DNA of 64,000 bases from Macrostomum lignano (lineage: Eukaryota): positions 1 to 64,000 of the forward strand of contig NIVC01003828.1 in NCBI GenBank assembly GCA_002269645.1, written 5' to 3'. The notes under the pieces are model-generated. The model did no database searches, was not told the origin of the DNA, and saw only the letters and a list, made by a program, of their open reading frames with translations. Position 1 is the first letter of the stretch. Every line of letters starts with the position of its first letter. Positions 2,565 to 62,039 of this stretch are shown here, piece by piece. A program made the position numbers and the translations under genes.

Positions 2565-3998
2565 CTAGACAAGCTATCAGTTAGGCTTAATCAAATTAGT
2601 TTTATCAATTATCATAGCTATGGATATAGCTATTGCAAGAAGGGATTATATTATATCCATTTTCGTTACTAGGGCCTAGCAAAAATCTAGGATAGAATTT
2701 TTGTACAAAATGATAGATACATTCTGTGTGCACTAATAAAAATTTTGTAGTTGTGCAATTTTTTGTAAAAATCTTATCTTATGTAATAAGAAAACTAGAA
2801 TTTGAAGTTAGCATAAAATGTTTCAAAAAGTTTATATTTTACTTGTAACATATAAGAAAGTTTTTAGATAAAAGAGGCAATTGTCTTCCTAAAAGGTCAT
2901 TGTTGGTTTTCTTAGAAATGATTTCCAGTCCTTTAATTATTTTAAGTATCAGCTTTTTAGTTCATGTCAATAGACATTTTTACTCTTTCATTATATTTTG
3001 TGGCTCTTTTCGTACAATAGGAGTACAAGCTATGCTCACAAAGTAAATGTCCGTAGACATTTGCAGCTCAGCAGCCATGAATGGCTTGTAAATAAAGAAC
3101 ATTTGTTAACTAAATAAAAGTTTATTTATTAATGACTATACTCTATTACTAAATAGTCTTTAATTTTAACCATAATTATTATAAAGTAATGAAGGAAATT
3201 AAAGTAGCCTACAATATGAGCTTAGGCTTATTGTTCTTTATAACTATAAATATATAAAACATAAATTTCTTTTATGATTATAAGAAATTTAGCTTAGTTT
3301 TGTAGTTTTGTCTTATTTGAATTAAATAGGCCTATCTAAATCATTATATTCTAGTAATAAATTTTCAAAATTGACAATGCAATGGAAAGTATATAAGATC
3401 CCTGGACCTTTATAGGCTATAGAAAAGTCTGTCTTGTTCCCATTCCCAATAAATCATTTGTTCCCATGACACCCAAATGTTTGTGCTTGAGCCATTATGC
3501 TTAGTTAGTACTATAAAGGTCATAGAATAACTAGACTGGCTACTTAGCACATTTACATGTAAACTATTTTCAGTTCAGTAGTAAGTTAAACTAAAGCATT
3601 TTAATGTATTTTATAAGATAAGGCTCATTTATTGGCCTTTACCCCTCAGCTTAAACCTTCCAACCATACCTTTTCACACTATCCCTTCCCCAATTTTTAT
3701 TGCCTTTCTTGGAATTCCAGCCTAAAGCTGCCATGTACATTTCAGTGGACTGGCTAATGTACACTATGCCTGAACCAATTAGCAAGTTGTTTAGGCCTGA
3801 AAGCTTGGGCTTCTAAACTTATCAAAGTCATTTCAGCTGCCTTTATTTTTATAAAATAGCTTTTATATTCTTCTTTGCTACTGAACTGAAAGTAGGAAGC
3901 TGTTTTACTAAGTATATATGCCTGAGTGGCCCATCTAGCTATTTTAGAATCTGTGTTCCACATAAGCTTATGTAATACCACAATAAGATATTTGGAAA

Positions 3999-4493
3999 AT
4001 GATTGCATATAAGCCTGTGGAAGTCATTGTGCCTCCCCCCAACCATTATTGTCAAACCAGCCCGTGGCGCATTGTATCTGATCTTGGCGGCGCCTACACA
4101 ATGGGCGCTATCGGCGGCACTCTGGTGTACTTTTACAAAGGCTACCGTACTGCTCCATCCAGCCAGCACATGCGCCTGATCTCGGCTCTGTCCAACGTGC
4201 GCCAACGAGCCCCGGCTTTGGGTGGCGCTTTCGCAATGTGGGGCGGCACTTTTGCAACCACCGAGTGCTCGTTGATCTACCTGCGACAGAAAGAGGACCC
4301 GTACAATAGCATCATGTCTGGCGCCGCGACCGGAGCTCTGCTGGCTGTGCGGCAGGGACCGGCCGCGATGGTTGCTCAAGCTCTGATTGGCGCAGTGCTG
4401 CTGGGCCTGATTGAAGGCATGGGCATCGTGTTCACCAGGATTATGCCCAGCATTCTGGCTGTCGAGGCTGAGGCTGCGGGTGGGGCTGGGTAA
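3999..4493 (+). CDS. TIMM17: Mitochondrial import inner membrane translocase subunit Tim17 (single exon, 164 aa)
   Basis: [63 protein letters not shown] and LLGLIEGMG match the Tim17 signature segments. Uninterrupted ATG-TAA ORF. Confidence 0.93.
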
Positions 4494-6498: not shown

Positions 6499-7945
6499 CC
6501 GCGCTCCCAGCTTCTAAAGGTCATCTTACTTGGCGACGGTGGCGTCGGCAAGTCGTCTATAATGACGCGCTACGTGCACCAGCGCTTCGATCAGCGACCG
6601 CAGCACACTATCGGTGTTGAGTTCTTAGTTAAAGAGCTTACTATTGATGGTATGCATTTTACTCTGCAGATTTGGGACACTGCGGGACAGGAGAGGTATC
6701 GATCTTTGCGGACTCCATTTTACAGGTGATTATGATTAGCTGTCTTAAAAGCTGGGCTTCACAGAGCAGAGAGTGGGGTGGGTGTCGAACAGGGCGGAGA
6801 CTGGGGTGGGTGTTAAACAGGGCAGAGAGTGGGGTGAGTGTCGGACAGGGCAGAGAGTGGGGTGGGTGTCGGACAGGGCAGAGACTGGGGTGGGTGTTAA
6901 ACAGGGCAGAGAGTGGGGTGAGTGTCGGACAGGGCAGAGAGTGGGGTGGGTGTCGGACAGGGCAGAGAGTGGGGTGGGTGTCGGACAGGGCAGAGTGGGG
7001 TGGGTGTCGGACAGGGCAGAGAGTGGGGTGAGTGTCGGACAGGGCAGAGAGTGGGGTGGGTGTCGGACAGGGCAGAGAGTGGGGTGGGTGTCGGACAGGG
7101 CAGAGTGGGGTGGGTGTCGGACAGGGCAGAGAGTGGGGTGAGTGTCGGACAGGGCAGAGAGTGGGGTGGGTGTCGGACAGGGCAGAGTGGGGTGGGTGTC
7201 GGACAGGGCAGAGAGTGGGGTGAGTGTCGGACAGGGCAGAGAGTGGGGTGGGTGTCGGACAGGGCAGAGAGTGGGGTGGGTGTCGGACAGGGCAGAGAGT
7301 GGGATGTGTCGAACAGGGCAGAGAATCGGGTGGGTGTTGTACGGCGGAGAATGGGGTGGGTGTCGAACGGGGCAGAGAATGGGGTGGGTGTTGCACAGGG
7401 CGGAGAATGAGGTGGGTGTCGTACAGGGCAGAAGGTGGGGTTGGTGTTGCTCCTAAATCTAGCGAACCCCGCAAACCACCCGCCGCAGAGGCGCAGATGC
7501 GTGCATCCTAGTGTATGCCCTAGACGATCGCCGCTCCTTCACCAACGTGGACATGTGGCGCCAGGAGTTCTTTCACTACTCCGACGTACTGGAAAGTGAC
7601 GGGCAGAAGTTCCCGTTCCTGCTAGTTGGCAATAAAAGCGACGTAGAATTGGCCGAAGTGTCAGTGGAAGATGCCGACGCGTGGGCCAACCAGTACGGCA
7701 TGCGGCATCTGACTGCCTCGGCTAAAAGTTCTGACAATGTTGACGCCGCTTTCAGTCACGTTGCGGCCGCGTGGTTGGCCCGGGCCAAAGCTGAAGCGGC
7801 CACGGCGGAGGCTGCAGCCGCAACTTCGTCAACTGCGGCGACTTCCACAGGGAGGATTCGAGTGCGAGCTGGTGGCGACGGCGGGAGCTCCTCCGGTCAG
7901 CTTGGTGGCAGCGGCGGCAAGAGGAGCGGCTTTGGCTGCTGCTGA
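6499..7945 (+). CDS. RAB9: Rab9-like small GTPase; exons 6499-6725 and 7489-7945; initiating exon not located
   Basis: LLKVILLGDGGVGKSSIMTRYV..HTIGVEFLVKEL..LQIWDTAGQERYRSLRTPFY, then phase-2 GT-AG intron (AG|A = Arg), then RGADACILVY..FPFLLVGNKSD..SAK..GFGCC-stop. RSLRTPFYRG is Rab9-typical; C-terminal CC is a prenylation motif. Confidence 0.9.
6765..7440. repeat. G-rich minisatellite, 28-bp unit GTCGGACAGGGCAGAGAGTGGGGTGGGT, in the Rab9 intron
   Basis: Tandem copies fill most of intron 6726-7488. Confidence 0.95.
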
Positions 7946-20053: not shown

Positions 20054-22376
20054 GGTCCAGGGTCGGCTAAGATGCGGCTGCCTTAAGCATCATCGGTTTT
20101 TTTTAATTTCATGTTATTATTTCGTCAGTGTCTAAAAATATCTTTTTTTCAGAAATGAATTACGAAAATGCCAATATATAAAATCTAATCAAATCAGATC
20201 AGAAGCTTTGTCTATGGTAGCGAGGTGCTTTTGTCATGCTGAAAATCCTCCATACGCTGCCTGCGTAGTCTATGGGCCTTAGTCTAAGTTGTCTATGGCT
20301 TTTTATCGCTTTGCCTGGCTTTTGCAGTCTATGGCCCATAGACTATTCTCAGTTAGGCTTTCAAAAGCTAAAGTACAGTCCTTAATTAAAAGCTCCACAG
20401 AACCCCCCTTTTTGGGCCATAGACACTAAAAAGCAAGCCTTCAAATAGCTTAATTTCTGCCCCGCTTAAATTAAAGTTTTTTTACCCTGGATTCTTCTAG
20501 CGTGTCTATAAAAAGAAATTATATTTTTGTTTTAACACGACTGCAGCTCGTGTGATTTCTTCTGTATCTAAACTGGGTGTAGTACAGCTGGCTGAGTAAA
20601 TTATGCTTTCCCTTTAAGTCTGCTTGCACTGGGCACTAAATGAGTCATAATACTTCATTGTTGCCGTCTATGAAGGACGTGCTTGTTTGCTTCAGATGCT
20701 TTTCAATTTTATTTTACGCAAAGTCGTAAGACTGAAGTGTGGCGTCAGTTCCTAAAATATATCAGCTTCTTTTTGTTGCAGAAATTCCTCTTTTAAATTA
20801 CAAGAAGAAATTATACTGCTTATAAAATGCGATATTCTCTACTCCGTTACTCCTGATTCTTAAATCTTAGCCCTTCCCATTCCCAAATCGGAAATCCCCA
20901 GATTCCCCATTCAGAAATCCCCAAATTCCCCATTCAGAAATACCCAAATTCCCCTTTCAGAAACACCCAAATTCCCCATTCAAAAATACCAAAATTTCCT
21001 ATTTAGAAATACCCAAATTTCCTATTTAGAAATACCCAAATTCCCCATTCAGAAATACCCAAATTCCCCATTCAGAAATACCCAAATTCCCCATTCAGAA
21101 ATCCCCAAATTTCCTATTTAGAAATACCCAAATTCCCCATTCAGAAATCCCCAAATTTCCTATTTAGAAATACCCAAATTCCCAATTCAGAAATACCCAA
21201 ATTCCCCATTCAGAAATACCCAAATTCCCCATTCAGAAATACCCAAATTCCCCATTCAGAAATACCCAAATTCCCCATTCAGAAATACCCAAATTCCCCA
21301 TTCAGAAATCCCCAAATTTCCTATTTAGAAATACCCAAATTCCCCATTCAGAAATCCCCAAATTTCCTATTTAGAAATACCCAAATTCCCAATTCAGAAA
21401 TACCCAAATTCCCCATTCAGAAATACCCAAATTCCCCATTCAGAAATACCCAAATTCCCAATTCAGAAATACCCAAATTCCCCATTCAGAAATACCCAAA
21501 TTCCCCATTCAGAAATCCCCAAATTTCCTATTTAGAAATACCCAAATTCCCCATTCAGAAATCCCCAAATTTCCCATTCAGAAATCCCAAAATTCCCTAT
21601 TTAGAAATACCCAAATTCCCCATTCAGAAATACCAAAATTCCCCATTCAGAAATCCCCAAATTTCCCATTCAGAAATCCCCAAATTTCCCATTCAGAAAT
21701 CCCAAAATTCCCTATTTAGAAATACCCAAATTCCCCATTCAGAAATCCCCAAATTTCCCATTTAGAAATACCCAAATTCCCCATTCAGAAATCCCCAAAT
21801 TTCCCATTCAGAAATCCCAAAATTCCCTATTTAGAAATACCCAAATTCCCCATTCAGAAACACCCAAATTCCCCATTCAGAAATACCCAAATTCCCCATT
21901 CAAAAATACCCAAATTTCCCATTCAGAAATCCCAAAATTCCCCATTTAGAAATACCCAAATTCCCCATTCAGAAATACCCTAATTTCCCATTCAGAAATA
22001 CCCAAATTCCCCATTCAAAAATACCCAAATTTCCCATTCAGAAATCCCAAAATTCCCTAATCAAAAATCCCAAAATTCCCAATTTAGAAATAACAAAATT
22101 CCTAATTCAGAAATCCCCAAATCTTTCAATCGAAAATGCCTAAATTCACTTTTCAAATCCCAATCGAATCTCCAGGTGAAGAATCGCCAACGCCAATCGA
22201 AAGAAGCCGACAACGCTGCCGGATCTGCGGCGGCGGCGCCAACTGGCCAGCGGCGCTATACCCGGCTTAACTTGGGCGCCGGCGCCGGCGGCAACGCCGC
22301 GGGCAGACGCGGCCGCACCAGCCGAAGCCGCAGTCGAGGAGGCGATCGAGACCGCGACAGGCGGAACCGTCGCTAA
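14194..22376 (+). CDS. ACIN1: Acinus (ACIN1, ASAP/EJC-associated RRM + RSB protein). Exons 14194-14514, 15170-15335, 15626-15780, 16409-16732, 17321-17927, 18717-18808, 22176-22376 (1866 nt, 621 aa). 5' end uncertain: an acceptor at 14213 is also plausible
   Basis: All six introns are GT-AG with matching phases (0,1,0,0,1,0). Motifs: RKPRQRRGAWG; ITSKVLD|KLLP; RRM VLKVTGLVRPFTPQQLRELL..WLDRIKTRCY..WPKGNSRALKVDF; RSB motif LLDQLFRKTCTTPFIYWMPLNDEQ; RS/RD-rich tail. Confidence 0.9.
14740..14990. repeat. ~22-23-bp minisatellite containing CCAT(A/G)GCAAC (RFX half-site-like), Acinus intron 1
   Basis: About 11 units such as CCATAGCAACAAGGATCCCATC. Confidence 0.85.
15366..15592. repeat. 31-bp minisatellite CACACAGCCCCACCTCACTTCCCGCAATGTA, Acinus intron 2
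   Basis: About 7 tandem copies. Confidence 0.92.
15861..16390. repeat. 28-bp minisatellite CTCAGTTGCTGGGCCAGCCTCCCAGATC family, Acinus intron 3
   Basis: First units are identical to the array at 8088; later units diverge. Confidence 0.93.
16900..17275. repeat. Degenerate ~33-bp minisatellite (TTTTC(C/A)CAGAGGAATC(A/G)TTGAT..GG), Acinus intron 4
   Basis: Recurrent GAATCATTGAT/GAATCGTTGAT cores. Confidence 0.8.
17935..18603. repeat. 30-bp minisatellite GTGTCATAACCCCTCCCTGACCTCAGTTTG, Acinus intron 5
   Basis: About 22 near-identical copies starting a few nt after the donor. Confidence 0.96.
18885..19560. repeat. 20-bp minisatellite with ~80-bp higher-order structure (CCTAATCCCCATTAGAAATC variants)
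   Basis: Four variant 20-mers recur in fixed order over ~19010-19320. Confidence 0.85.
20870..22140. repeat. 23-bp minisatellite TTCCCCATTCAGAAATACCCAAA, Acinus intron 6
   Basis: About 55 copies, ending just upstream of the last acceptor. Confidence 0.96.
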
Positions 22377-32962: not shown

Positions 32963-33157
32963 TTAGCCTTTATATCGTTTGCCGGATGGTAGGTGATGGA
33001 TTTTTTTACATCTAATGGCTTCTTTTGATATAAGCTCGTAGATGCATTTATATGGATGTCCGACATGTGCTGAGATCATGCCCTCTTTCATACTGATATT
33101 TTGAGTGCACTGTACTGACCATAGACTATTTTGACTGGCGTGTGGCTGCGCCTTCAC
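32963..33157 (-). mobile_element. Possible MULE-type transposase C-terminal remnant
   Basis: MKEGMISAHVGHPYKCIYELISKEA loosely resembles the NxxEGxH...HPxIxxxIxxLxxE motif. Short and weak. Confidence 0.25.
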
Positions 33158-33656
33158 TCTATGAAGGTCCGATCAAGGACTTGGGCAACGCTTACGGAAA
33201 ATCAATAGAAACAAATCCCAGTTCAAAACATTCTGCCACCGAAGCAAGGTTTAGCCATAGACAAAATTTTCCCCAGTCTGAAATGAATTTCCGCTAGTTT
33301 TTTTAGAACTGGACTTTGATCAACATTGAACGTGAAAAGGTGTATTAAATTCCAGCACAAGGACCACTAAAGTCACTTCGTCACTTCGAATGACTTAAGT
33401 TGTCCTTGTTCCAGCAGCCAATGAAATTCATGGGGGGGGGGGAATATCCCAATTTTTAGGAAGCCTTGGCCATAGACTCTTTCAGGTGAGCCATCCTTTC
33501 TATTCCTTCATCCATGTGTAAACTCCCTGCAGTTCTTGAAGGTGGCTCTTTTTCTGTTAAATTTTGGGTGGCTGGATGAGAAATGTCTATGGGGGAAATC
33601 CAACATACATTGCTCAGAAAGTGAAATAAAGAAGGCGGTAGGCCTTCCTTTTCTAC

Positions 33657-52200: not shown

Positions 52201-53899
52201 TAAAGTCTATGACTCTGGTGGAAAGCAGTCTTCCTTCCAAGAATACGCTCGTAAGTCTGCCGATCCAGTTAAAAGTAAAGCAAAAGCCGACAAGCAGGCA
52301 AGGATTTACGATACTGAAAAGGTGCCGCGGTATCTAAACTTCCTACTCGTTGAGACGAAGGATAACCATCTATTTCCACGGCCACTAGTAAACTCTACAA
52401 ACGGCAGTCCTGTGTTTTCAACGAAACAGAATCGCGGTGTAAACTATCTTGTTTGATTTATGCATAACTTGAGCGAGAAGGCTGGTCTATCAAAGATGTA
52501 TTCTAATCACAGCATCAAGTAATATAAATTCTATTGATCTAAAAAATCTCTGTATCTTAGACAAAGCATGCTAACCTGATCCTTGTTCATATACCAATAT
52601 GGATGGGCTGCTTAGGACAGAAATGAGCGAAACGGTCGAGGCGCGGAGCGCCGAGGCTGATTCACTTATTTCTGCCCGTAGCAACCTATCCATATTATTA
52701 TGTAAAAGATGAAGCACGCTTTTCTGGGCACTATTTTTTCGAGTTGTATAATCTGGCCCCAAAGAATGGCACCAGGGCAGACAGTGTACCCAGCAGGATC
52801 ATCTCCAACTACGACTGGAAGCCCCCATCTGTGAGAGTCAAGGATGCACCCGAAGCCAACGCGATGTTTCTTCCCGATGTTACGGTTTAGAACCTCCGGG
52901 GCTCCGGCCAGTTTTGGGTTGCCGATCCGGAGACTGCAAACGGGCTGGGATCTCCGACCGGAGACTTTAAAGGGTGTAAGATCTCCTTCGGAGACTACAA
53001 ACGGTTATGGGTCTCCGCGATAGGAGATCCGTAAAAACCGTTGTGGGATCTCTAGGGCATGGTCAGTTCTCCCCATCCGGAGATCCTAAACCAGATTCTG
53101 TTGTCCCCTCGGAGATTCTGCACCGTTTGCCATGTCGAAAATTATAATATTTAGCTTTTTATTGTATATGGGAACCTTCTCTTAACCAACATCGTCAGTA
53201 ATTTTTCCATTTCAAGGCATTTTCCAAATGAGGAAGTAGTTTTCTATGTAGCTCGCAAATTTCGCAGCCGTCATGCAGGGCCATGTCAGGGAAAAATAGC
53301 AAGCTTTGGTAAATAGGAGTAAATGTGTTGTCAGCACATTTTTTCGCAATACAATTGTAACAAAAAACTGGAAATGCTCTTTTTCCCTCATACGCCTCTT
53401 TAAATTGCTTTTCTCTCTGGCGTTCAGTTCGACAAGGACTTGTGCGTGGTCATTGTTCAGTACATGGAGAATATTTGATTACAAAGTAGCCAAATTAGAA
53501 ATTATTATTACTATTATTATTACTATTAGAAAGTAAGAAAATCACAAACTGAAAATGGCTCATCATATGCCTTCACTGCTTTTATACGAGCTACAATTTG
53601 CAATTTTTTCACTTTTCGCCCTCAATGGCTCATTCCTTCCGCCGTCAAATTACGCAATCAAATCATTCGACTTACGAGTACGAGTACAGTACAGTACATA
53701 CAAGACGACAAACAAGTCTAACCAAGCCTAAATTTAGCCTCACTTGATTGATGGGCTGTGTGACGGGGCGTATGAACTAAATAGATAAACTTATCGAAAA
53801 AGTTGCGCTAGCTAGGCTGCTCACATGCTGGGCTTTTTAAAATCAGAGAAATTTAATATAGCTTTTATTTTCTAAGATAACAATACTCCGGAGAGTCTA

Positions 53900-54435: not shown

Positions 54436-54628
54436 CAAACTACAAAGGGCCGAGGGCGCCAAGTAAATATTGCCCGGAAAATAGAGTGCTTTATCTCATA
54501 TTGAGCATGTTGGGAGCCTCATAGATTTTCCGAGCATCAAGTAAATAGTGCCCGGAAAAAATTGACTGCTGGGTGCAGCTTATGTCTATGGCCAAGTTCG
54601 AAGTTAACGAGTATGTACGAGTAAGCTA

Positions 54629-55657
54629 CACTTTTTTACTTCCAATTTTGAAAAACATGCTCTCAAATATTGAGATCTTGGCATTCAATTTTGACAGTCT
54701 GTGGTATCGCTTATCGAAATGTTCAACCCATTTTGACAAACTCAGATGCAATAATCACAATTTTCAATCGAAAATGACGAACTCCAAACTTTATTAAAAA
54801 TTAGCTAGCAATTTTGACAGTGTGCATTCAATTTTGACGCTGGGGTAAAAAACAGTGCCTTTGTCCTGCCGTCTATGGAACATAACTTGCGTATGTGCAT
54901 CAATTATTTGACAGAGTGCATCCAAAAGTGTCACATTGTATCAGTACAAATTGAAACATTATTTTGATGTCTTATTACATTCTGTATGGCAGGTCTGCGA
55001 GTCAACTCCAAAGTTAGCGACGACAGGAGCCGGTTTATTGCTGCCTATGAGAATGGTGACGACTTTTTTTCACTTGGCTCGTGCTTTGGGGATCAAAGGA
55101 ACCACAGCGTATGCAGTAGCAGTGTAGCAGTGGACGAGTATAAAGCTGCCAAAAGGAGGTCAGACATTCAGACGAGTTGATCAGCTTCATGATCATGGGG
55201 TTCATGAAGAACTCGATTGATCCTTCATCTAGTCTTGCTATGGATGGGACCTGGGTTCGGCGAACACTCTCCGGGGCGATTGGCCACGGCGAATTCTCGC
55301 CAGGTCAGTCAGGGCGCGTATGCCCGGCTAGGGTTCGGATTGGAGCTATAACTGTCACTTTTGAATGCAGTCTGTCAAGAAAAGATGCACATATACAAGT
55401 TTTGTTCCATAGACGACAGGACAAAGGCACTGTTTTGTACCCCAGTGTCAAAATTGAATGCACACTGTCAAAATTGCTAGCAAATTGGTAATAAAGTTTG
55501 GAGTTTGTCATTTTCGATTGAAAATCGTCATTATTGCATCAGAGTTTGTCAAAATAAGTTGAAAATTTCGATAAGCGATACCACAGACTGTCAAAATAGA
55601 ATGCACAGATGTCAACATTGAGAGCATATACTTTTCAAAATCGAAAGTAAAAAGGTG
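54629..55657 (+). mobile_element. Internally deleted IS630/Tc1-type transposon with ~305-bp TIRs and TA TSD
   Basis: TA|CACTTTTTTACTTCC..GAAAGTAAAAAGGTG|TA. Arms 54629-54935 and ~55352-55657 are imperfect reverse complements with repeated ATTTTGACAG motifs. Spacer encodes DDRSRFIAAYENGDDFF/(frameshift)HLARALGIKGTTAYAVA, an HTH. Confidence 0.8.
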
Positions 55658-55704
55658 TAGCGAGCTGAGATCATAAAAATATAGTCTGTGGGTTGCAGCT
55701 TATA

Positions 55705-56994
55705 TGTCTATGGCCAAATCCGAAGTTGACCAGTACAAGTCAGCTAGCGAGTGAGCAAGCGCGCGAGTCTAAGTAAGATACTTTTTTATCTGCTCTGCGA
55801 TGGAAGAGTCATATATAATAAATCTACTTGTTATACTATGGCGAAGACTGTTGGTGATTTTGATCCGAACTGACTGCGCCAATCTGACATCGATGCTGTC
55901 TTAGCTGTCGGTGGAGACCTTCGTAATCATCATGATATCTCAGCCGTCATGATGATTACGAAGACATGATTGCGAATTCATGATGACTACTGGCAGCTAC
56001 ATGACAACAGCTACGTCGGAGGAGTCCGGAACGTCTCAATCGAATTACTTCGGATCATCATTAACTTTCGAAGATGCCATGGCTCTTAACGACAGTAGGA
56101 AGTTATCAAAGACACTGGATAGAGACAAGTGGGCGAGTAAAGTGTTCACCGCCTGGATGGCTACCAGATTTCACCAACTTCCAGACACGGTTGGTGAACT
56201 GAGTCACGACCAGCTACGTGACTTGCTACCGCGATTCTTCCACGAAAATGGAGGAACGCTATCCCCTTGGATCAATTGTCTCCATCGCTGCTGGACTACA
56301 GCGTCAGGCCAGTGCTTGCAGTAAAAATCCACCTGCGGACTTCTTTTCGGGGTCAGGACTTCAAAGTTGTCACTGATTCGATTGATGCTGCTATGAAAAT
56401 TTCTACTTCAAGTACCAAGGAGGGCAATGGACTAAAGCGCAAGAGTGCTGAAACGAATTAATTCGAAGAAGAGGCGCAACTTTGGGAGAAACAACTTGGT
56501 GACAACCAGCATGGCGTGGTGAAAAGAACAGTAACTGTTTTTGCCGCTTGTCGAGGAGCTCCTGCATTGTGTTTGGGTGCTTGCTTTGCTAGCTGGCACA
56601 TGGTTCATCCTAATTGACCATGGTAGGATGAGCGGCTTTTGTGTTGAAAAAACAATGAAGTTTTGGCGGCCTAATGCGCACTTCTATTTATTCATGAGCT
56701 GAATTCCCTTTTTCTGTCACCTATTCTACTGTGTTTTTCTGTTCGAATACAGTTCAATTATACACAGCTCGTTCTATCTATTAATAGTCAAGACTGCTTT
56801 ATAAAAACTAATGCTTTTTGCGTTAGTTTGTGTTATCGATACAGAAATCATGATCTACGTTCGTGTTATACTATACTACGTATAAGATACAAATGTACTA
56901 ACTACTTCAAATACTATTATTCGTTTTTAATATACGCAGGTGTACACTTGGTCCTGGTCCTATAATTCTTGATCTGTGATGATTGCCATAGACA
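55705..56994 (+). mobile_element. Crypton-like (tyrosine recombinase/DUF3504) element remnant 1, bounded by TGTCTATGG...CCATAGACA
   Basis: KTLDRDKWASKVFTAW..ELSHDQLRDLLPRFFHE.NG, then frameshifted QDFKVVTDSIDAAMKIS..KEGNGLKRKSAE..EEEAQLWEKQLG, typical of Crypton YR N-terminal/core regions. Confidence 0.78.
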
Positions 56995-57172
56995 TTGCCA
57001 CCTAACCTATAGGAAAACAAGCAGCTTTCCAACGAAAACGGACGCGGCACGTTTTTGAGCCATGTCAGTCGGCAACGGGGGTATTAAATTCTGCAATCTA
57101 CGATTGCCCTAGACACTAAGATTCGGTTCCGTCAATAACTATGATTATACCCCTTTTGGCCACGCCGAATAA

Positions 57173-58369
57173 GTCTATGGTCCAATGTAAGACCGGCCAA
57201 ATAAACGATCCAAATAAAAAAAAATAAGATAAACGAATGAGCCACAAGAAAGTACTCAAAGAAATACATGTACAAGCAACAAATTATACTGTTTTAGAAA
57301 GCGAGCAGTTGTTAACCAGTTTTTTGGCTTGACAGTTAAAAGTAAGTCAATAGGTAGTAACAGATCAACTCAATCAAAGTTGACAATCACCCCGCAAACT
57401 CCACATTGACCCCCCCCCCAAATCACAGAACTCACCAGTTGTTGTGAACATAACTACCAATCACGCCTTCAGACCAGAGTTTCTTTTCGGACGTCGGCTC
57501 TCATTGAATTCCCCGTCCTTCCAGAGGCTCCATGGCTTTCCGCATTGGTTGAACAAGTAGTATTGCAGCATGCTGAAAATAATCCTTCAACGTAGAAACA
57601 CCATAGCGATCACCACGTTGATTCCGGATCTCAAAGATAAAACACTTGAGAATGTAGTTGAGATCGCGCTTGCTCAAACTCGGATAGTCGGTTGCGGTTG
57701 CCAATGGCAATTCACTTAAGACAGCTTCCACTTCAGCAAGACTAAGTGGTTTAAAGCTGACGCTATTAACATCACTCATGCAGCAAATAAATCGAAAATG
57801 TCACAGAAAAGGTTTATTAGAGACAGAGACAACTACTCACTTTTAAATACCCAACACAGTCGTTTTTGTGACGGGCATCAAACAATTTCTCTAGTTCAAA
57901 TGTACAATGTTAATACGGCCAAACGGTGTATAAATAGAAATTATTTCCGTTTATTTTAGTCTATGGTCTGAAACATAAGCTTCGGACTCGCATCCAGGCC
58001 GAGGCGAAAAACGAGGTCCTCCTCTGCTTTTGTTTCAGACCAAAGAAATAAATAAATGGAAATAACTTTCATTTAAACAACAACATCAACAGCAACACGA
58101 GGTGGTTGAAATCAACGTAGCAAGCAACAAAAACAAATTAACAAGAGTGAGTGAGAAAGGATACGAATCTGATGCAATTTTTCTATGTCTAATTATTAAT
58201 TACCACACTGCAATTGTTCAGATAGAAGTGGATTGCGATGTCACTGCTGCGTGATTGCTCATGAGCTGCACGTTGAATTTGGCAACCATCGATCACAGCG
58301 GAACATTCTTGAAGTTTCACGTCTTATTTTTCCGACCATAGACTAAAATAAACGGAAATAATTTCTATT
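57173..58369 (-). mobile_element. Crypton-like remnant 2
   Basis: Minus-strand ORF 57779-57501 contains LSKRDLNYILKCFIFEIRNQRGDRYGVSTLKDYF (LNxxLxxFxxExRxxxGxxY motif). Flanked by GTCTATGG at 57173 and CCATAGAC at 58336. Perfect 36-bp inverted repeat 57933-57968 / 58334-58369. Confidence 0.72.
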
Positions 58370-58745
58370 GTCCGTTTGTACTGGCGCACACCGACCAAGC
58401 TCTTGTGGCCAGTTGTCTCCATGATTTGTTGTTCATCGAGTTCAGCATGGTACAATCTTGTGGCACAAGTGGCTCCCAGGCTGTGATTCCGCCTATTTCC
58501 CTGGACACCCGATTCTTAACAGAGACGCTTCAACATGGTCGAAACGGTATTCTTACCAAGTGAACGCTTGTTGTACCAACATGTCTCAGTAATTAAGATT
58601 CCGCATTGCCTGCAGGTAAAAGCGACTGGTGTCTGTCGGGCGTAAGCTAAAAAACTTCATAACCGGCAGAAGACGGATGGCACGATTTCGTGCCATAAAG
58701 TAAGTATATAATCTCTCCCGTTCATTCATTTATCTGTGGCCGTCT

Positions 58746-59522
58746 GAACGACTAAGAGCTTGTTTCTCGGCCGAGGCGCAGCCGAGGCCTGAGAAACGAG
58801 TTTGAAGTCGTTCTGGCCATAGACAAATGAATAAACGGGAGAGATAGTATTTTTCCACAACTTGGCTCGGTCTTGTGGAAAAAAAGAACTATAGCTCAAC
58901 AGTCTATGGTTCTGATCGAAACGGAACAGTCCCGAGTTTGATGCGATAGCGATAGTTTGATGCTGTGTTAGCAATTTAATTACAACGCTTGCGCACGAAA
59001 TAGCTGAAGACATTAGTGACTTTGCCAGTATTGACGACGATATAGCGAGAATGGAGACACCCTCAAGCCCTCGCTTTTTGATTTTACGTCGGAAGAAGAG
59101 GTCATGGCTGTTGTCGATGGCTGTGTGCCAGAAGCTACTAAGAAGAAAGCTACTTGGATGGTCAACACGTTCATCATGCTGGAGGCGCTCCGACAACTGG
59201 GACTACGACGGTTGCCATTGTTCCTGATGCTGGAGGCGCTCCGACAACTGGGTCTACGACGGTTTCTACTGCTCCTGCGAAGAAAATGCGAATCGAAGTT
59301 TTTGGAAATGATAACACCGTCGTGCTCACTATGGAGTGAGAAAGACAAAAAGTGCTTTACTGTCATCGACTATCAGTCCATTAGCGTTAGTGTCAACCAT
59401 AGTTGCTTTTTGTGGCTTTTTTGTTGTTGTTGACAGTTCCAAATAAATCGTTTCTTCGTCCGGGAAAAATAAATAAATAGCGGGCATCGGGCAAAATTAA
59501 GGCCCATATATATCCCATAGAC
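58746..59522 (+). mobile_element. Crypton-like remnant 3 (internally deleted) with upstream hairpins
   Basis: SPRF/(frameshift)DFTSEEEVMAVVDGCVPEATKKKATWMVNTF is fused to a C-terminal-like PAKKMRIEVFGNDNTVVLTME*. GTCTATGG at 58902 and CCATAGAC at 59515. Confidence 0.65.
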
Positions 59523-59713
59523 AAATGGTTGAAAAATAAAGCCCACACTTGACTAACTGCTTGGAATAGCGGGCAATTTAAGGCTCACACCATGCTCTAT
59601 TATGGCCAGCAACTATACTGGGCACGAAATGACGTTTCGCGCCCGCTGCATCTGTCAATGACAAAAACGCCTTCACTTCTATAGATCAACTTCATTTCGC
59701 GCCCGCTGTCACT

Positions 59714-60300
59714 GTCTATGGTAAAAATTTATACGAAGGACACTATTTGTATATAGTAGCCTGTATTTCTCGATTATTTCTCCATTTTCTCTACAGTATT
59801 TTTTTCGTTTTTGTATCATGTTGCGCTACGACAGAATACGCTAAAACGAAATTGGCGGTTTGACTGGCGATGAGTTGGATTTTGTCGCTCGTTTTGTAAA
59901 CCGCGAGGATACCGTCCCAATCGGCCAATGGACAGGCCTTACTGAGAACCATGAACGCTTCAACGACGAGGAACTCCGTGATCCAACCAACGCTGACATT
60001 TCTCTGTTGCGTGAGTTGACCTCTGAAGAACAATATCTTCTGCGACAGGTAGAGGAGGATAGCAAGCGAAAGTCTACCGCCAAGCAGACGGAACATCATA
60101 TTCAAAGGTTTAAAAAGTTTCTGATGGAACAGGCAATGCCAACCGACATTGAGAGCATCTGATGCTGGTTCAAATTCTCTTTCGAACTGCATGATAGCCA
60201 TTAGAAGTCCAGTTGGCGAAGCATCCAATTCGTTTGGGAACTGCAAGTTCGAAAACTGTACCTTAACATCACCCTCAACAAGTGAGTGTCTGATCGAGCA
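59714..60300 (+). mobile_element. Crypton-like remnant 4 (internally deleted)
   Basis: EEDSKRKSTAKQTEHHIQRFKKFLMEQAMPTDIESI is followed directly, in another frame, by SNSFGNCKFENC, like the F-x-NC-x-F-x-NC tail of such proteins. GTCTATGG at 59714. Confidence 0.6.
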
Positions 60301-60493
60301 GACTGAACTTTTAGCATGTTTGAGACAATGATGCGTCCCTTACTTCACTGTATACGTAAATAAGAGCTAAATAAGAGCCCACATTTCGTTTTAATCTGTT
60401 ATTGCTGATTGACTTACAATTAATGACCGGCCTTTAATCAGAGGTCATTACTACGAAGTGACATTTTAATCAATGACCGCTGCCGTTTTTAAT

Positions 60494-60831
60494 GTCTATG
60501 GCCAAGTTGAAGGGTTGAAGGGACGCGAAGGACCACCTTCTTATTTACAAGAATATGCGACCTTGAGGCTGCCGGGCACAGCATGTCCGACATCATGTCC
60601 ATCACTGGAAAACTATCTGAAAGAACAACGCGCCGGTACCTGGCCAAGAGACGGGATCGACCATTGCAACAATCCAGTGCAGCCGTGGCGTCAGTGCTTC
60701 AGCTACGAGTGGAAGATGAGAGTGCAGTTGCTCTGCAGCCTGGTGCCGCCCAGCGAACGGTTATTGACGAGTCGGAAGTGGCGAGGGAGATCAGCGTCGG
60801 GTCGGGGCCCAAGCTTGTCGTTAAAAACTGA
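60494..60831 (+). mobile_element. Tyrosine-recombinase catalytic C-terminal remnant 5
   Basis: Frame extended upstream of the 60583 ORF reads RRTTFLFTRICDLEAAGHSMSDIMSITGKLSERTTRRY, resembling YR box II (HSxR..L..AG..IMxxTGHxS....Y). Starts with TGTCTATGGCCAAGTTGAAG, like 54583 and 55705. Confidence 0.55.
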
Positions 60832-62039
60832 ACGTTGCATGGTTGCACATTCAATTAAATAATTTTTTGAATCTGACAGAACTTATCACTGACTCACTCC
60901 ACTGATACGAGTCGTGGCTACTGCAAAATGAATCAAGCTTTCTCGTTTTCATCCGTTTTATTGGTCCTTTTATTAAAATTTATGGTTTTTTTCCGTTTTG
61001 TAGTTATAAAGAGAAGCCATCTGTGTGTGACGGTGTGAGCTTTTGTAGATCGTTTTGTGAGCCGTCGTTGTGAAGCCTTTACAGAGTACATGTAATTATT
61101 GGTATTTAAGTATTCTATTTAATTGTACATCTGCACGTATTGTTTGACACGTTAAGTAGATTAAGTTCTTTGGATTTTTAAGATCTTTTACTACAACTTA
61201 AAATTACTACTAAAACGTTTTAAATTTGGTTCGCAGATTTTCGACAGTATTTTCGACAGCTCCCTGTAATTCGCCCAGTTACTTCTTCACTACGTGTAAA
61301 TCCTGATAGACCGCTACACAACTCATCAACATTAGCAAAAGAAAAGTAGGTCTACAACTTCGTCACATGTGTAATAAATTCTGATTCAAAAGAATGGCCA
61401 CCAATTGCATGGAGGTCACTGCATCAAACTAAAATTTTGGGCAATGACTACGCACAAATCCCTGTCGACTTGAACGTTAGAGAGAAAAGCAATTTTAACA
61501 GGTGCATCAGGGTAAGAGCAAACATTTTAGCATCCACGATGTAGAATTGTATTAAATAGTGAGAAAAAAGGAGGGCAGTAAGCGCAAGAAGCAAGGTGCT
61601 GTTTACTGAGCAAGAAGTGCAAGAAAAAGTTCTCTATTAGAATTGTAACGCAGAATCCTGAACTGACAACACATTTAAACGTGTTTACCAACGCTTGCTA
61701 TTTCTGCCCTGATATGGTGCGCGAAAGCTGCGAAATATGCGAGCTACCGTGAAAACTACTTTCCCAAGTGGAAAATGTCTTCAAATGGAAAAAAATATCT
61801 GACGTTGTTGGCCAAAGCACCATAAAGAATGGCGGGGATGCCGCTGCAGCCAAGACTGCTAAGCCCAATCGCTTCGCTGCGGCCGCTGCCGTTTAAACTA
61901 TCACCTCTGATGGCATCATCATCGACGTCAAGCATCTCTTCGCCGAGGTGGCGTGTGCCAGCAGAAGCGAGAACATCCTCTTCCACCGCGGCCACCATCG
62001 CCGGTAGGTCTACATGCATGCATAAAGTACAAAATCGAC

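What the first reader, a model, noticed from the sequence alone, without database searches (positions are those of the whole stretch)
54584..60831. Cluster of five tyrosine-recombinase (Crypton-like) remnants, each opened by GTCTATGG and often closed by CCATAGAC
Seen: five distinct YR/DUF3504-like fragments in ~5 kb. In ORF orientation each is preceded by GTCTATGG (55706; 58336 on the - strand; 58902; 59714; 60494). Remnants 1-3 are also followed by the inverse (56986; 57173; 59515). A sixth copy of the same start (TGTCTATGGCCAAGTTCGAAG) at 54583 is interrupted by the Tc1 element. Known: Cryptons are YR DNA transposons usually described with short direct terminal repeats rather than TIRs; TATGG termini are recalled for oomycete CryptonS. 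Inference: this may be an undescribed animal YR transposon family with inverted octamer ends that act as recombination sites, with elements inserting at each other's ends to form a cluster.
Basis: partly seen in the sequence, partly recalled or inferred. Interest (0 to 1): 0.85.

Follow-up and report, generated by a model that had tools for sequence, protein, structure and literature searches.

The report
Nest of decayed Crypton transposons
This stretch is a pile-up of broken copies of a known kind of jumping gene (CryptonA, moved by a tyrosine recombinase), and the repeated GTCTATGG is a real signal shared by this lineage that lies near, not at, the element ends, giving a first handle on how animal Cryptons mark their ends.

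Summary
The octamer is real. There are 25 exact copies in 64 kb against 1.6 expected, and 13 lie in 54584-60501. The region is a nest of decayed CryptonA-type (QRICH1-N/DUF3504/tyrosine recombinase) transposons from several unrelated families.

Three copies have significant profile support. A fourth is borderline and two are not significant.

The same octamer flanks intact relatives of the closest lineage in other public samples: 7 copies in 4.3 kb of their non-coding flanks against 0.13 expected. A sister set carries GTCTGTGG instead. More distant CryptonA loci lack it.

The octamer is not the element tip. In the best-sampled family, homology between the window and three foreign contigs runs about 150 bp upstream of it, to a GC-rich hairpin at the centre of a palindrome.

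- The "sixth copy" at 54584 is the upstream octamer module of remnant 1, split off by a 1,037-bp inverted-repeat element.
- The octamer at 58336 lies in a 42-bp insertion inside a recombinase reading frame.

Best reading: a lineage-specific subterminal recombinase site, often in the arms of 110-145-bp palindromes at copy junctions. Resident copies then act as landing pads. This is a new variant of a known kind, of moderate interest.

The parts
54436..54583 (+). 5' leader of remnant 1: right half of the GC-rich hairpin H plus two decayed hairpins of the type GGGCnnnA-AGTAAA-TAnTGCCC
   Evidence: Aligns with the 5' leaders of L002, L043 and L004. Homology to L002 fades at the centre of H, near 54436-54440.
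54584..54591 (+).
   Evidence: Once the 54625-55661 insertion is removed, O1 and O2 are about 85 bp apart. The paired octamers of L004 and L043 are 106 bp apart and those of L002 59 bp apart.
54625..55661 (.). Each arm carries GTCTATGG (54871, 55407) and GTCTGTGG (54697, 55581).
   Evidence: Self-BLAST gives 311 bp at 89% identity, inverted. There is no Pfam hit.
55706..55713 (+). Octamer O2, 87 bp upstream of the start codon of remnant 1
   Evidence: The position matches L004 (78 bp) and L043 (65 bp).
55801..56614 (+). Remnant 1: N-terminal half of a CryptonA tyrosine recombinase, with frameshifts
   Evidence: Collinear HMM hits over positions 42-225 of 460, best E=1.6e-15. blastx to P0033 and P0018.
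56986..56993 (-). Inverted octamer downstream of remnant 1. A degenerate direct copy, CCCTAGAC, lies at 57107.
57173..57180 (+). Octamer at the 3' side of copy Y
57440..57800 (-). Copy Y: N-terminal part of a different CryptonA tyrosine recombinase (start codon at 57779)
   Evidence: HMM positions 108-214, E=3.3e-6 and 3.7e-4. Pfam QRICH1 0.0022. tblastn E=0.002.
57931..58075 (.). Palindrome (foldback) A at the tandem junction between X and Y. It carries the octamer at 57959-57966 in one arm and a degenerate partner, CCAAAGAA, at 58040-58047.
   Evidence: 54-nt arms, 81% complementary. DNA fold -36.8 kcal/mol, z=-9.6.
58192..58323 (-). Copy X: C-terminal tail of the recombinase, ending ...NCSVVINN followed by the stop
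   Evidence: Lineage HMM E=3.8e-8. Contiguous with the core in alignments to P0033, P0018, P0100 and P0052.
58324..58368 (-). Insertion inside the reading frame of X: 15 codons (45 bp) where relatives have one, a net 42 bp. It carries the octamer at 58336-58343 and is a 96% copy of one arm of palindrome A (57933-57979).
   Evidence: A 14-codon gap in all four homologues. Self-BLAST.
58369..58729 (-). Copy X: DUF3504 and catalytic core of the recombinase. It has an internal stop, and the catalytic Arg of the HxxR box is replaced (NHSLGAT).
   Evidence: Pfam Phage_integrase 3.9e-9. HMM E=2.4e-26. 56% identity to P0033.
58718..58852 (.). Palindrome (foldback) B between the divergent copies X and remnant 3. 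It carries the octamer at 58817-58824, a degenerate partner ATCTGTGG at 58732-58739, and a cGCAg loop at the centre.
   Evidence: (z=-8.3).
58902..59522 (+). Remnant 3: an internally deleted copy. Octamer at 58902, an N-terminal motif, the C-terminal tail, then the inverted octamer at 59515.
   Evidence: HMM E=0.05 to 0.28, borderline. The only blastx hit is E=0.003 to P0011.
59714..60493 (+). Remnant 4: octamer at 59714, then a possible N-terminal motif and tail. Not statistically supported.
   Evidence: HMM E=4.8 to 6.9. Only pattern-level resemblance.
60494..60831 (+). Remnant 5: octamer at 60494 with the same 5' module as O1 and O2 (GTCTATGGCCAAGTT), then a possible C-terminal motif (TGKLS...RRY). 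Not statistically supported.
   Evidence: HMM E=2.5 to 7.3.
20210..20424 (.). Mini-cluster of six octamers, including GTCTATGGcCCATAGAC at 20327-20343. No recombinase coding.
   Evidence: No HMM hit.
33119..33592 (.). Mini-cluster of four octamers with flanks resembling the palindrome arms. 33118-33133 is identical to 16 nt around the L034 octamer.

Best explanation
The region from about 54.4 to 60.9 kb is a nest of at least six degraded copies of CryptonA-type DNA transposons. Most are internally deleted and they come from several divergent families. Each element normally consists of one gene for a QRICH1-N/DUF3504 tyrosine recombinase (YR) plus short non-coding ends.

GTCTATGG is a cis-motif specific to this Crypton lineage. 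It sits in the non-coding leader, 65-270 bp before the start codon, often twice. It sits again in the trailer, about 80-230 bp after the stop. It is often found in the arms of 110-145-bp palindromes that lie at the junctions between copies.

Inferred: the octamer is the recombinase's binding site, or part of its core site. An excised circular copy therefore recombines preferentially with sites carried by resident copies, which builds nests.

Inferred: the real element boundary is more likely at or near the centre of the palindrome (hairpin H) than at the octamer.

Shown: the Crypton identity, the enrichment, the recurrence of the motif in foreign relatives, and its position relative to genes and to homology limits. 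Not shown: binding, crossover position and mobility.
For: - Enrichment is 25 against 1.6 expected.
- All significant CryptonA HMM hits in the 64-kb window fall in 55956-58729.
- The copies share no DNA similarity apart from the octamer modules and palindrome arms, so they are independent insertions.
- The octamer recurs beside intact relatives: L004 at 589 and 695 before the ATG at 773; L033 at 19 and 1539 around ORF 146-1417; L034 at 156 and 1732 around ORF 249-1601; L032 at 3539 after the stop at 3438. That is 7 copies in 4,307 bp of flanks against 0.13 expected.
- L002, L003 and L043 come from one sequencing project and represent two families 51% identical in protein. Each carries GTCTGTGG twice in the same leader positions.
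- Other, mostly more distant CryptonA loci (about 144 kb, L004 excluded) hold one copy, which is chance level.
- Leader homology extends about 150 bp upstream of the octamer to half of hairpin H.
- Palindromes sit at the X-Y junction, between the divergent pair X and remnant 3, and between the divergent pair in L032.
- Contig L039 runs from H-like sequence to H-like sequence (compared with L043).
Against: - No genome-wide copies of any one family were available, so no boundary is defined by many independent insertions.
- The relatives are short contigs from unknown organisms. Some may be transcripts or may break at palindromes for assembly reasons.
- Octamer orientation and number differ between families.
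- Not every junction in the nest has a clear palindrome.
- A transcriptional role for the motif is not excluded.
- Two of the supposed copies (remnants 4 and 5) lack statistical support.
Confidence: 0.55

Rival explanations
1. Goodwin-type model. The octamer is itself the crossover or donor sequence at the element terminus. Elements integrate into matching GTCTATGG targets and so end up flanked by direct repeats of it. The conserved sequence upstream of the octamer is then the 3' end of a neighbouring copy in an array.
For: - L033 has an intact recombinase ORF flanked by direct TTGTCTATGGC, with a 1,520-bp unit. That is within the 1.2-2.3 kb reported for CryptonA.
- The seven (+) octamers cut the nest into units of 1122, 1467, 786, 943, 812 and 780 bp, each holding one remnant.
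- An ATAGCCCGAA...CTGTCTGCTG module lies inside the L033 trailer, before the right-hand octamer.
- The active CryptonF-1_cRei ends in CACCG and targets CAYCG (PMC9977147).
- CryptonS elements share TATGG termini, and the octamer ends in TATGG.
Against: - Four independent loci (the window, L002, L043 and L004) show the same hairpin-octamer-octamer-ATG layout. Under this model all four would have to be array junctions.
- In the window that layout abuts unrelated DNA at half of hairpin H.
- The extended consensus TTGTCTATGGC is common to many sites, so the 11-bp direct repeat in L033 is weak evidence.
- The octamers in L034 are inverted relative to each other.
Confidence: 0.2
2. The inverted octamers GTCTATGG...CCATAGAC are the very ends (short terminal inverted repeats) of each element and are the recombination sites.
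For: - Remnants 1 and 3 are bracketed this way: 55706/56986 and 58902/59515.
- Palindromes A and B, and 20327-20343, show the same inverted pairing.
Against: - Homology runs past the octamer on the 5' side.
- L033, remnant 4 and Y have direct pairs, and L034 has the opposite inverted sense.
- The interval opened at 58336 is not one element, and that octamer lies inside a reading frame.
Confidence: 0.08
3. The octamer and the palindromes belong to a separate small foldback element or regulatory module, such as a promoter or terminator motif, that merely accompanies Cryptons. They have no role in recombination.
For: - A 45-bp piece of a palindrome arm lies inside the reading frame of X.
- Octamer mini-clusters exist without any recombinase coding.
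- The motif lies at a fairly fixed distance before the start codon.
Against: - The motif also occurs after the stop codon, and in both orientations.
- It co-varies with the host across different Crypton families (GTCTATGG against GTCTGTGG).
- It is absent from more distant Cryptons. This fits a recombinase-site pairing better than a general promoter element.
Confidence: 0.12

Closest known systems
CryptonA (animal Cryptons with DUF3504; Kojima and Jurka 2011, PMC3212892)
   Same: - A single gene for a tyrosine recombinase with QRICH1-type N-terminal, DUF3504 and integrase-like domains.
- Unit size about 1.5 kb.
- Short internally deleted non-autonomous derivatives.
- No reverse transcriptase or DDE transposase.
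   Different: Published CryptonA and CryptonI entries have terminal repeats listed as 'n.d.', and the text says none were found. Here a lineage shows a defined octamer, a repeated ATnCCCGGAAA-like motif and a GC-rich hairpin palindrome in its ends.
CryptonS of oomycetes and diatoms (TATGG termini)
   Same: The octamer GTCTATGG ends in TATGG, the direct terminal repeat shared by most CryptonS elements.
   Different: - The protein here is of the CryptonA type, not CryptonS.
- The motif is 8 bp or longer.
- It is not at the tip in the best-sampled family.
- It occurs in both orientations.
CryptonF-1_cRei, the active Crypton of Chlamydomonas (PMC9977147)
   Same: It uses a short specific motif (CACCG at the terminus, CAYCG at the target) and drives recombinase-mediated inversions and rearrangements between copies and target sites. 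That could explain mixed orientations and scrambled pieces in a nest.
   Different: It belongs to a different Crypton group, and nests and palindromes are not reported for it. Activity is shown there and not here.
Glomhopper, the fungal CryptonA (PMC13465315)
   Same: DUF3504 recombinase elements, many of them truncated, sitting in repeat-rich compartments.
   Different: Their terminal repeats are described as variable or poorly conserved. No octamer or palindrome architecture is described.
DIRS-type tyrosine recombinase retroelements, and hairpin sites such as integron attC (by analogy only)
   Same: Inverted or palindromic terminal structures are used by a tyrosine recombinase. An internal copy of a terminal arm (58324-58368) recalls an internal complementary region.
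   Different: No reverse transcriptase, RNase H or methyltransferase is present, and the units are 0.8-1.5 kb. Nothing here shows single-strand recombination.

Membership tests
Crypton (CryptonA group) | Encodes a tyrosine recombinase of the integrase fold with the R-H-R-Y catalytic set | tested here: met
   Pfam Phage_integrase 3.9e-9 on 58369-58656. The motifs NHSL[R]AT...TGH[KR]S...RQY align with relatives. The window copy X itself is dead: Arg is replaced by Gly and there is an internal stop. Relatives P0018, P0033 and P0105 are intact.
Crypton (CryptonA group) | DUF3504 domain and QRICH1-type N-terminal domain, placing it with CryptonA and ZMYM/QRICH1 relatives | tested here: met
   The closest relatives carry PF12012 and PF25561. 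The window fragments are collinear with a 74-sequence CryptonA HMM. The direct Pfam hits are weak: DUF3504 0.055 and QRICH1 0.0022.
Crypton (CryptonA group) | Recombinase only, with no reverse transcriptase or DDE transposase in the element | tested here: met
   No other Pfam domain appears in the longer reading frames of 54.1-60.9 kb. The L033 unit of 1,520 bp holds only the recombinase gene.
Crypton (CryptonA group) | No terminal inverted repeats or target-site duplication; short direct repeats at the termini matching the target | tested here: inconclusive
   Direct TTGTCTATGGC flanks L033. However, homology runs beyond the octamer in another family, and palindrome arms could act as inverted ends.
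Crypton (CryptonA group) | Mobile: multiple dispersed copies, with filled and empty sites | not testable with these tools
   The source genome was not available. Only the 64-kb window and short foreign contigs could be examined.
CryptonS | CryptonS-type recombinase with its conserved C-terminal region, and TATGG direct terminal repeats | tested here: not met
   The protein is DUF3504/CryptonA-like. Only the TATGG pentamer within the octamer is shared. The CryptonS C-terminal region was not compared directly.
DIRS/Ngaro/PAT tyrosine recombinase retrotransposons | Reverse transcriptase and RNase H (with or without methyltransferase) alongside the recombinase | tested here: not met
   No such domains were found. 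The units are too short to hold them.
   The 5' homology extends about 150 bp past the octamer. Octamer orientation is inconsistent.

The most novel reading that the evidence does not exclude
Animal CryptonA elements of this lineage may use a composite palindromic attachment site. This would be a GC-rich hairpin with a cGNAg loop, flanked by arms that carry the octamer. They would recombine at or near the palindrome centre, leaving each integrated copy with arm-derived inverted ends. Full palindromes would then be rebuilt wherever two copies abut. All Crypton families in one host would share the same octamer, so that resident copies serve as safe landing pads. A folded single-strand intermediate, as at integron attC sites, is conceivable.
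Probability: 0.15. Interest if true: 0.75.

Novelty: new variant of a known kind. Interest (0 to 1): 0.5.

Why it matters
Cryptons are among the least understood eukaryotic DNA transposons. For animal Cryptons the ends have been listed as 'not detected' since 2011, and they are still called poorly conserved in 2026. That makes them hard to annotate and leaves their mechanism open.

A lineage with a short exact motif, a conserved hairpin palindrome and intact recombinase genes in public data gives concrete DNA substrates for binding and recombination assays. It also gives a search key for delimiting elements.

A host-specific motif variant shared by different families, together with the nesting, would point to self-targeted insertion as a way to limit damage to the host.

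Tried and rejected
- **Chance or low complexity.** Rejected by shuffles and by recurrence of the motif in foreign relatives.
- **A structured RNA gene, tRNA or 5S-like origin for the motif.** Rfam found no family at gathering score and ARAGORN found no tRNA.
- **Literature search for the octamer itself.** It returned only primer matches. A search for the sample accessions found nothing.
- **Looking up the window's own reading frame to find sister copies.** It is not on record.
- **A general CryptonA feature.** Rejected: about 144 kb of other, mostly more distant, CryptonA loci hold one octamer.
- **A mini-intron reading of the 42-bp insertion in X.** No usable GT...AG of plausible length.
- **An inversion between the octamers at 57959 and 58336.** Undoing it would put the tail of X in the wrong orientation.
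- **A DIRS-like retroelement.** No reverse transcriptase was found.
- **The exact hairpin H motif in the window.** No match within 3 mismatches. Only diverged equivalents lie at the palindrome centres.
- **Tc1 identity of the interrupting element.** Not confirmed.
- **The source organism.** It could not be identified. Tim17-family and Ras-family exons show only that the window is eukaryotic. An animal origin rests on my reading of a KLF-like zinc-finger frame, which gave no Pfam hit.


Full report
**Observation**

GTCTATGG occurs 25 times exactly in the 64-kb window. Dinucleotide-preserving shuffles give 1.64 on average and at most 7. Additional copies lie at 57959(+) and 58817(-), and two lie in the long inverted repeats of the interrupting element (54871, 55407).

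Further groups lie at 20210-20424. That group has six copies, including GTCTATGGcCCATAGAC. Another group lies at 33119-33592, and there are singles at 2325 and 9759. Copies with one mismatch are not enriched: 29 against about 40 expected. The motif is therefore kept exact or is young.

The flanks differ from site to site, apart from an A/T-rich left side and a pyrimidine on the right. The extended consensus is roughly TTGTCTATGGC.

**Coding content**

I built a profile from 74 full-length CryptonA-like proteins found in public data, and a second profile from the 20 closest relatives. Both were run against all six frames of the window. Significant hits occur only between 55956 and 58729.

- Remnant 1 (+ strand) covers profile positions 42-225 through several frameshifts. 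Its best E-value is 1.6e-15. blastx places its start codon at about 55801.
- Copy Y (- strand, 57800-57440) covers positions 108-214, with E=3.3e-6 and 3.7e-4.
- Copy X (- strand, 58729-58192) covers positions 304-457, with E=2.4e-26 for the core and 3.8e-8 for the tail. It gives a Pfam Phage_integrase hit of 3.9e-9.
- X is dead. It has an internal stop, and the Arg of the HxxR box is Gly.
- Remnant 3 is borderline (E=0.05 to 0.28).
- Remnants 4 and 5 are not significant (E=2.5 to 7). They show only motif-level resemblance to the N-terminal box, to the TGHxS...RxY box and to the F-x-N-C-x-V-x-I tail.

No reverse transcriptase or other domain is present. The copies share no nucleotide similarity with each other, apart from the octamer modules and one palindrome arm. 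They are therefore independent insertions of different families, not a tandem duplication.

The octamer at 58336 lies inside the reading frame of X. Alignments to four homologues show 15 codons where the relatives have one, a net insertion of 42 bp. It falls exactly between RQYKRT and DV[KQ]L. The inserted DNA is a 96% copy of one arm of the palindrome 400 bp away. I could not explain it. Templated filler DNA from break repair is the simplest idea.

The 'sixth copy' at 54584 is not a separate element. When the 1,037-bp inverted-repeat element (54625-55661) is removed, the octamers at 54584 and 55706 are about 85 bp apart. The joined leader then aligns with the leaders of L043, L002 and L004. 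Each of those also has two octamer modules, 59-106 bp apart, with the second 65-78 bp before the start codon.

**Relatives**

The closest proteins are 48-56% identical to X. They are P0033 (contigs L002 and L003), P0018 (L004), P0105 (L033), P0061 (L034), P0098 (L032) and P0052 (L043), all from unrelated metagenome or read-archive assemblies.

Octamer positions in these relatives:

| Contig | Octamer position(s) | Gene landmark |
|---|---|---|
| L004 | 589 and 695 | ATG at 773 |
| L033 | 19 and 1539 | Intact 423-codon gene at 146-1417; direct repeats of TTGTCTATGGC |
| L034 | CCATAGAC at 156; GTCTATGG at 1732 | 93 bp before the ATG; 131 bp after the stop |
| L032 | CCATAGAC at 3539; TCTATGG at 3519 | 101 bp and 81 bp after the stop at 3438 |

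In 4,307 bp of non-coding flanks of seven close relatives there are 7 octamers against 0.13 expected.

L002, L003 and L043 come from one sequencing project and represent two families only 51% identical in protein. All three carry GTCTGTGG twice in the same leader positions. About 144 kb around other, mostly more distant, CryptonA genes hold one octamer, which is chance level. The motif is therefore lineage-specific and possibly host-specific, and it is shared across families within a host.

**Where the octamer sits**

In the P0033/P0018/P0052 family the leader has a fixed layout:
- a GC-rich hairpin H (CCCGAGAGCC-GNA-GGCTCGAGGG), exact in L002, L003, L032 and L034, read by eye in L043, and cut by the contig start in L041;
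- then two smaller hairpins with an AGTAAA loop;
- then one or two octamers;
- then the start codon.

The window reproduces this layout from 54436 onward. Homology to L002 fades in the middle of H, next to unrelated DNA.

H lies at the centre of longer palindromes in L043 and L032. Contigs L002, L034, L041 and L043 start at or near it. L039 runs from H-like sequence at one end to H-like sequence at the other.

In the window, two palindromes of 145 and 135 nt fold far better than shuffles (z=-9.6 and -8.3). Each carries the octamer in one arm and a decayed partner in the other. One palindrome sits at the tandem X-Y junction. The other sits between the divergent pair X and remnant 3, just as a palindrome lies between the two divergent genes of L032.

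**Mechanism**

Shown:
- This is a nest of CryptonA remnants.
- The octamer is a conserved, lineage-specific part of their non-coding ends on both sides of the gene.

Inferred:
- The octamer is the recombinase's recognition element.
- The true boundary is nearer the palindrome centre.
- Incoming circles recombine with sites on resident copies, which gives nests.

The main rival is the Goodwin model, as demonstrated for CryptonF-1_cRei (CACCG terminus, CAYCG target). In it the octamer is the crossover, and elements are flanked by direct copies. Three things favour it:
- the direct repeat in L033;
- the fact that the seven (+) octamers tile the nest into units of 780-1467 bp, each holding one remnant;
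- the TATGG shared with CryptonS termini.

The repeated leader architecture in four independent loci argues against it. Recombinase-driven inversions of the kind seen in Chlamydomonas could account for the mixed orientations.

**Comparison and novelty**

The elements are members of CryptonA by protein content. Published animal Cryptons have no detected terminal repeats. Fungal CryptonA ends are described as variable or poorly conserved. I found no description of the octamer, the ATnCCCGGAAA-like repeats or the H palindrome. That search covered only the held library.

I rate this a new variant of a known kind. It is of moderate interest because it makes the long-open question of animal Crypton ends testable.

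**Limits**

- The source genome and organism are unknown to me.
- Boundaries rest on a handful of short contigs.

Noticed in passing
window 58324-58368: An insertion carrying the octamer lies inside an otherwise collinear recombinase reading frame: 15 codons where four homologues have one, a net 42 bp. It is a 96% copy of the palindrome arm at 57933-57979. Its origin is unexplained (templated repair filler, or a recombination relic).
   Followed up: partly
L002 14-32, L003 16-34, L032 1829-1847, L034 22-40; also L041 start and L043 about 38-60: A 23-nt GC-rich hairpin, CCCGAGAGCC-GNA-GGCTCGAGGG, is invariant apart from the middle loop base (A, T or C) across elements whose recombinases are only about 50% identical. 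It sits at the centre of longer palindromes, and contigs tend to break there.
   Followed up: partly
L002 167 and 226; L003 169 and 228; L043 158 and 264: Contigs from one sequencing project carry GTCTGTGG instead of GTCTATGG, twice each, in two different Crypton families. This suggests a host-wide variant of the site.
   Followed up: partly
window 54625-55661: The interrupting element with about 310-bp inverted repeats carries GTCTATGG and GTCTGTGG in each arm. Chance alone would rarely give this. Its relation to the Crypton system, if any, is unknown, and its Tc1 identity is unverified.
   Followed up: partly
window 20210-20424 and 33119-33592: Octamer mini-clusters with 1-215 bp between copies and no recombinase coding. 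One is arranged symmetrically around GTCTATGGcCCATAGAC. They may be relics of deleted elements or preferred target arrays.
   Followed up: partly
window 52457-52519 and 52715-52736: A possible further 21-residue recombinase fragment (HMM E=0.02 to 0.05) and a leader-hairpin-like 22-mer (91% to L002) lie about 2 kb upstream of the nest. The nest may extend to about 52.4 kb.
   Followed up: no
window 53399-53455 and 61442-61498: A 57-bp inverted repeat (86%) flanks the whole nest. Its translations resemble each other, so these look like two inverted fragments of another unidentified repeat.
   Followed up: no
L004 1-460: By my own reading, and not tested with any tool, a mariner-like transposase remnant lies directly upstream of the Crypton leader. 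This recalls the published MarCry fusion but may be simple nesting.
   Followed up: no
L032 315-3438: Two different intact CryptonA genes (437 and 438 codons) lie head to head around one palindrome. This is the same arrangement as X and remnant 3 in the window.
   Followed up: partly
window 5.0-7.5, 15.3-16.4, 21.0-22.4, 28.6-31.0, 38.7-39.9, 42.3-45.3, 45.8-46.6, 47.4-48.1 kb: The window is unusually rich in long minisatellite arrays that read open in several frames. Host exons of the Tim17 family (3987-4490) and Ras family (7463-7942) lie between them.
   Followed up: no
window 59190-59280: A tandem duplication of about 45 bp (MLEALRQLGLRR twice) lies inside remnant 3.
   Followed up: no
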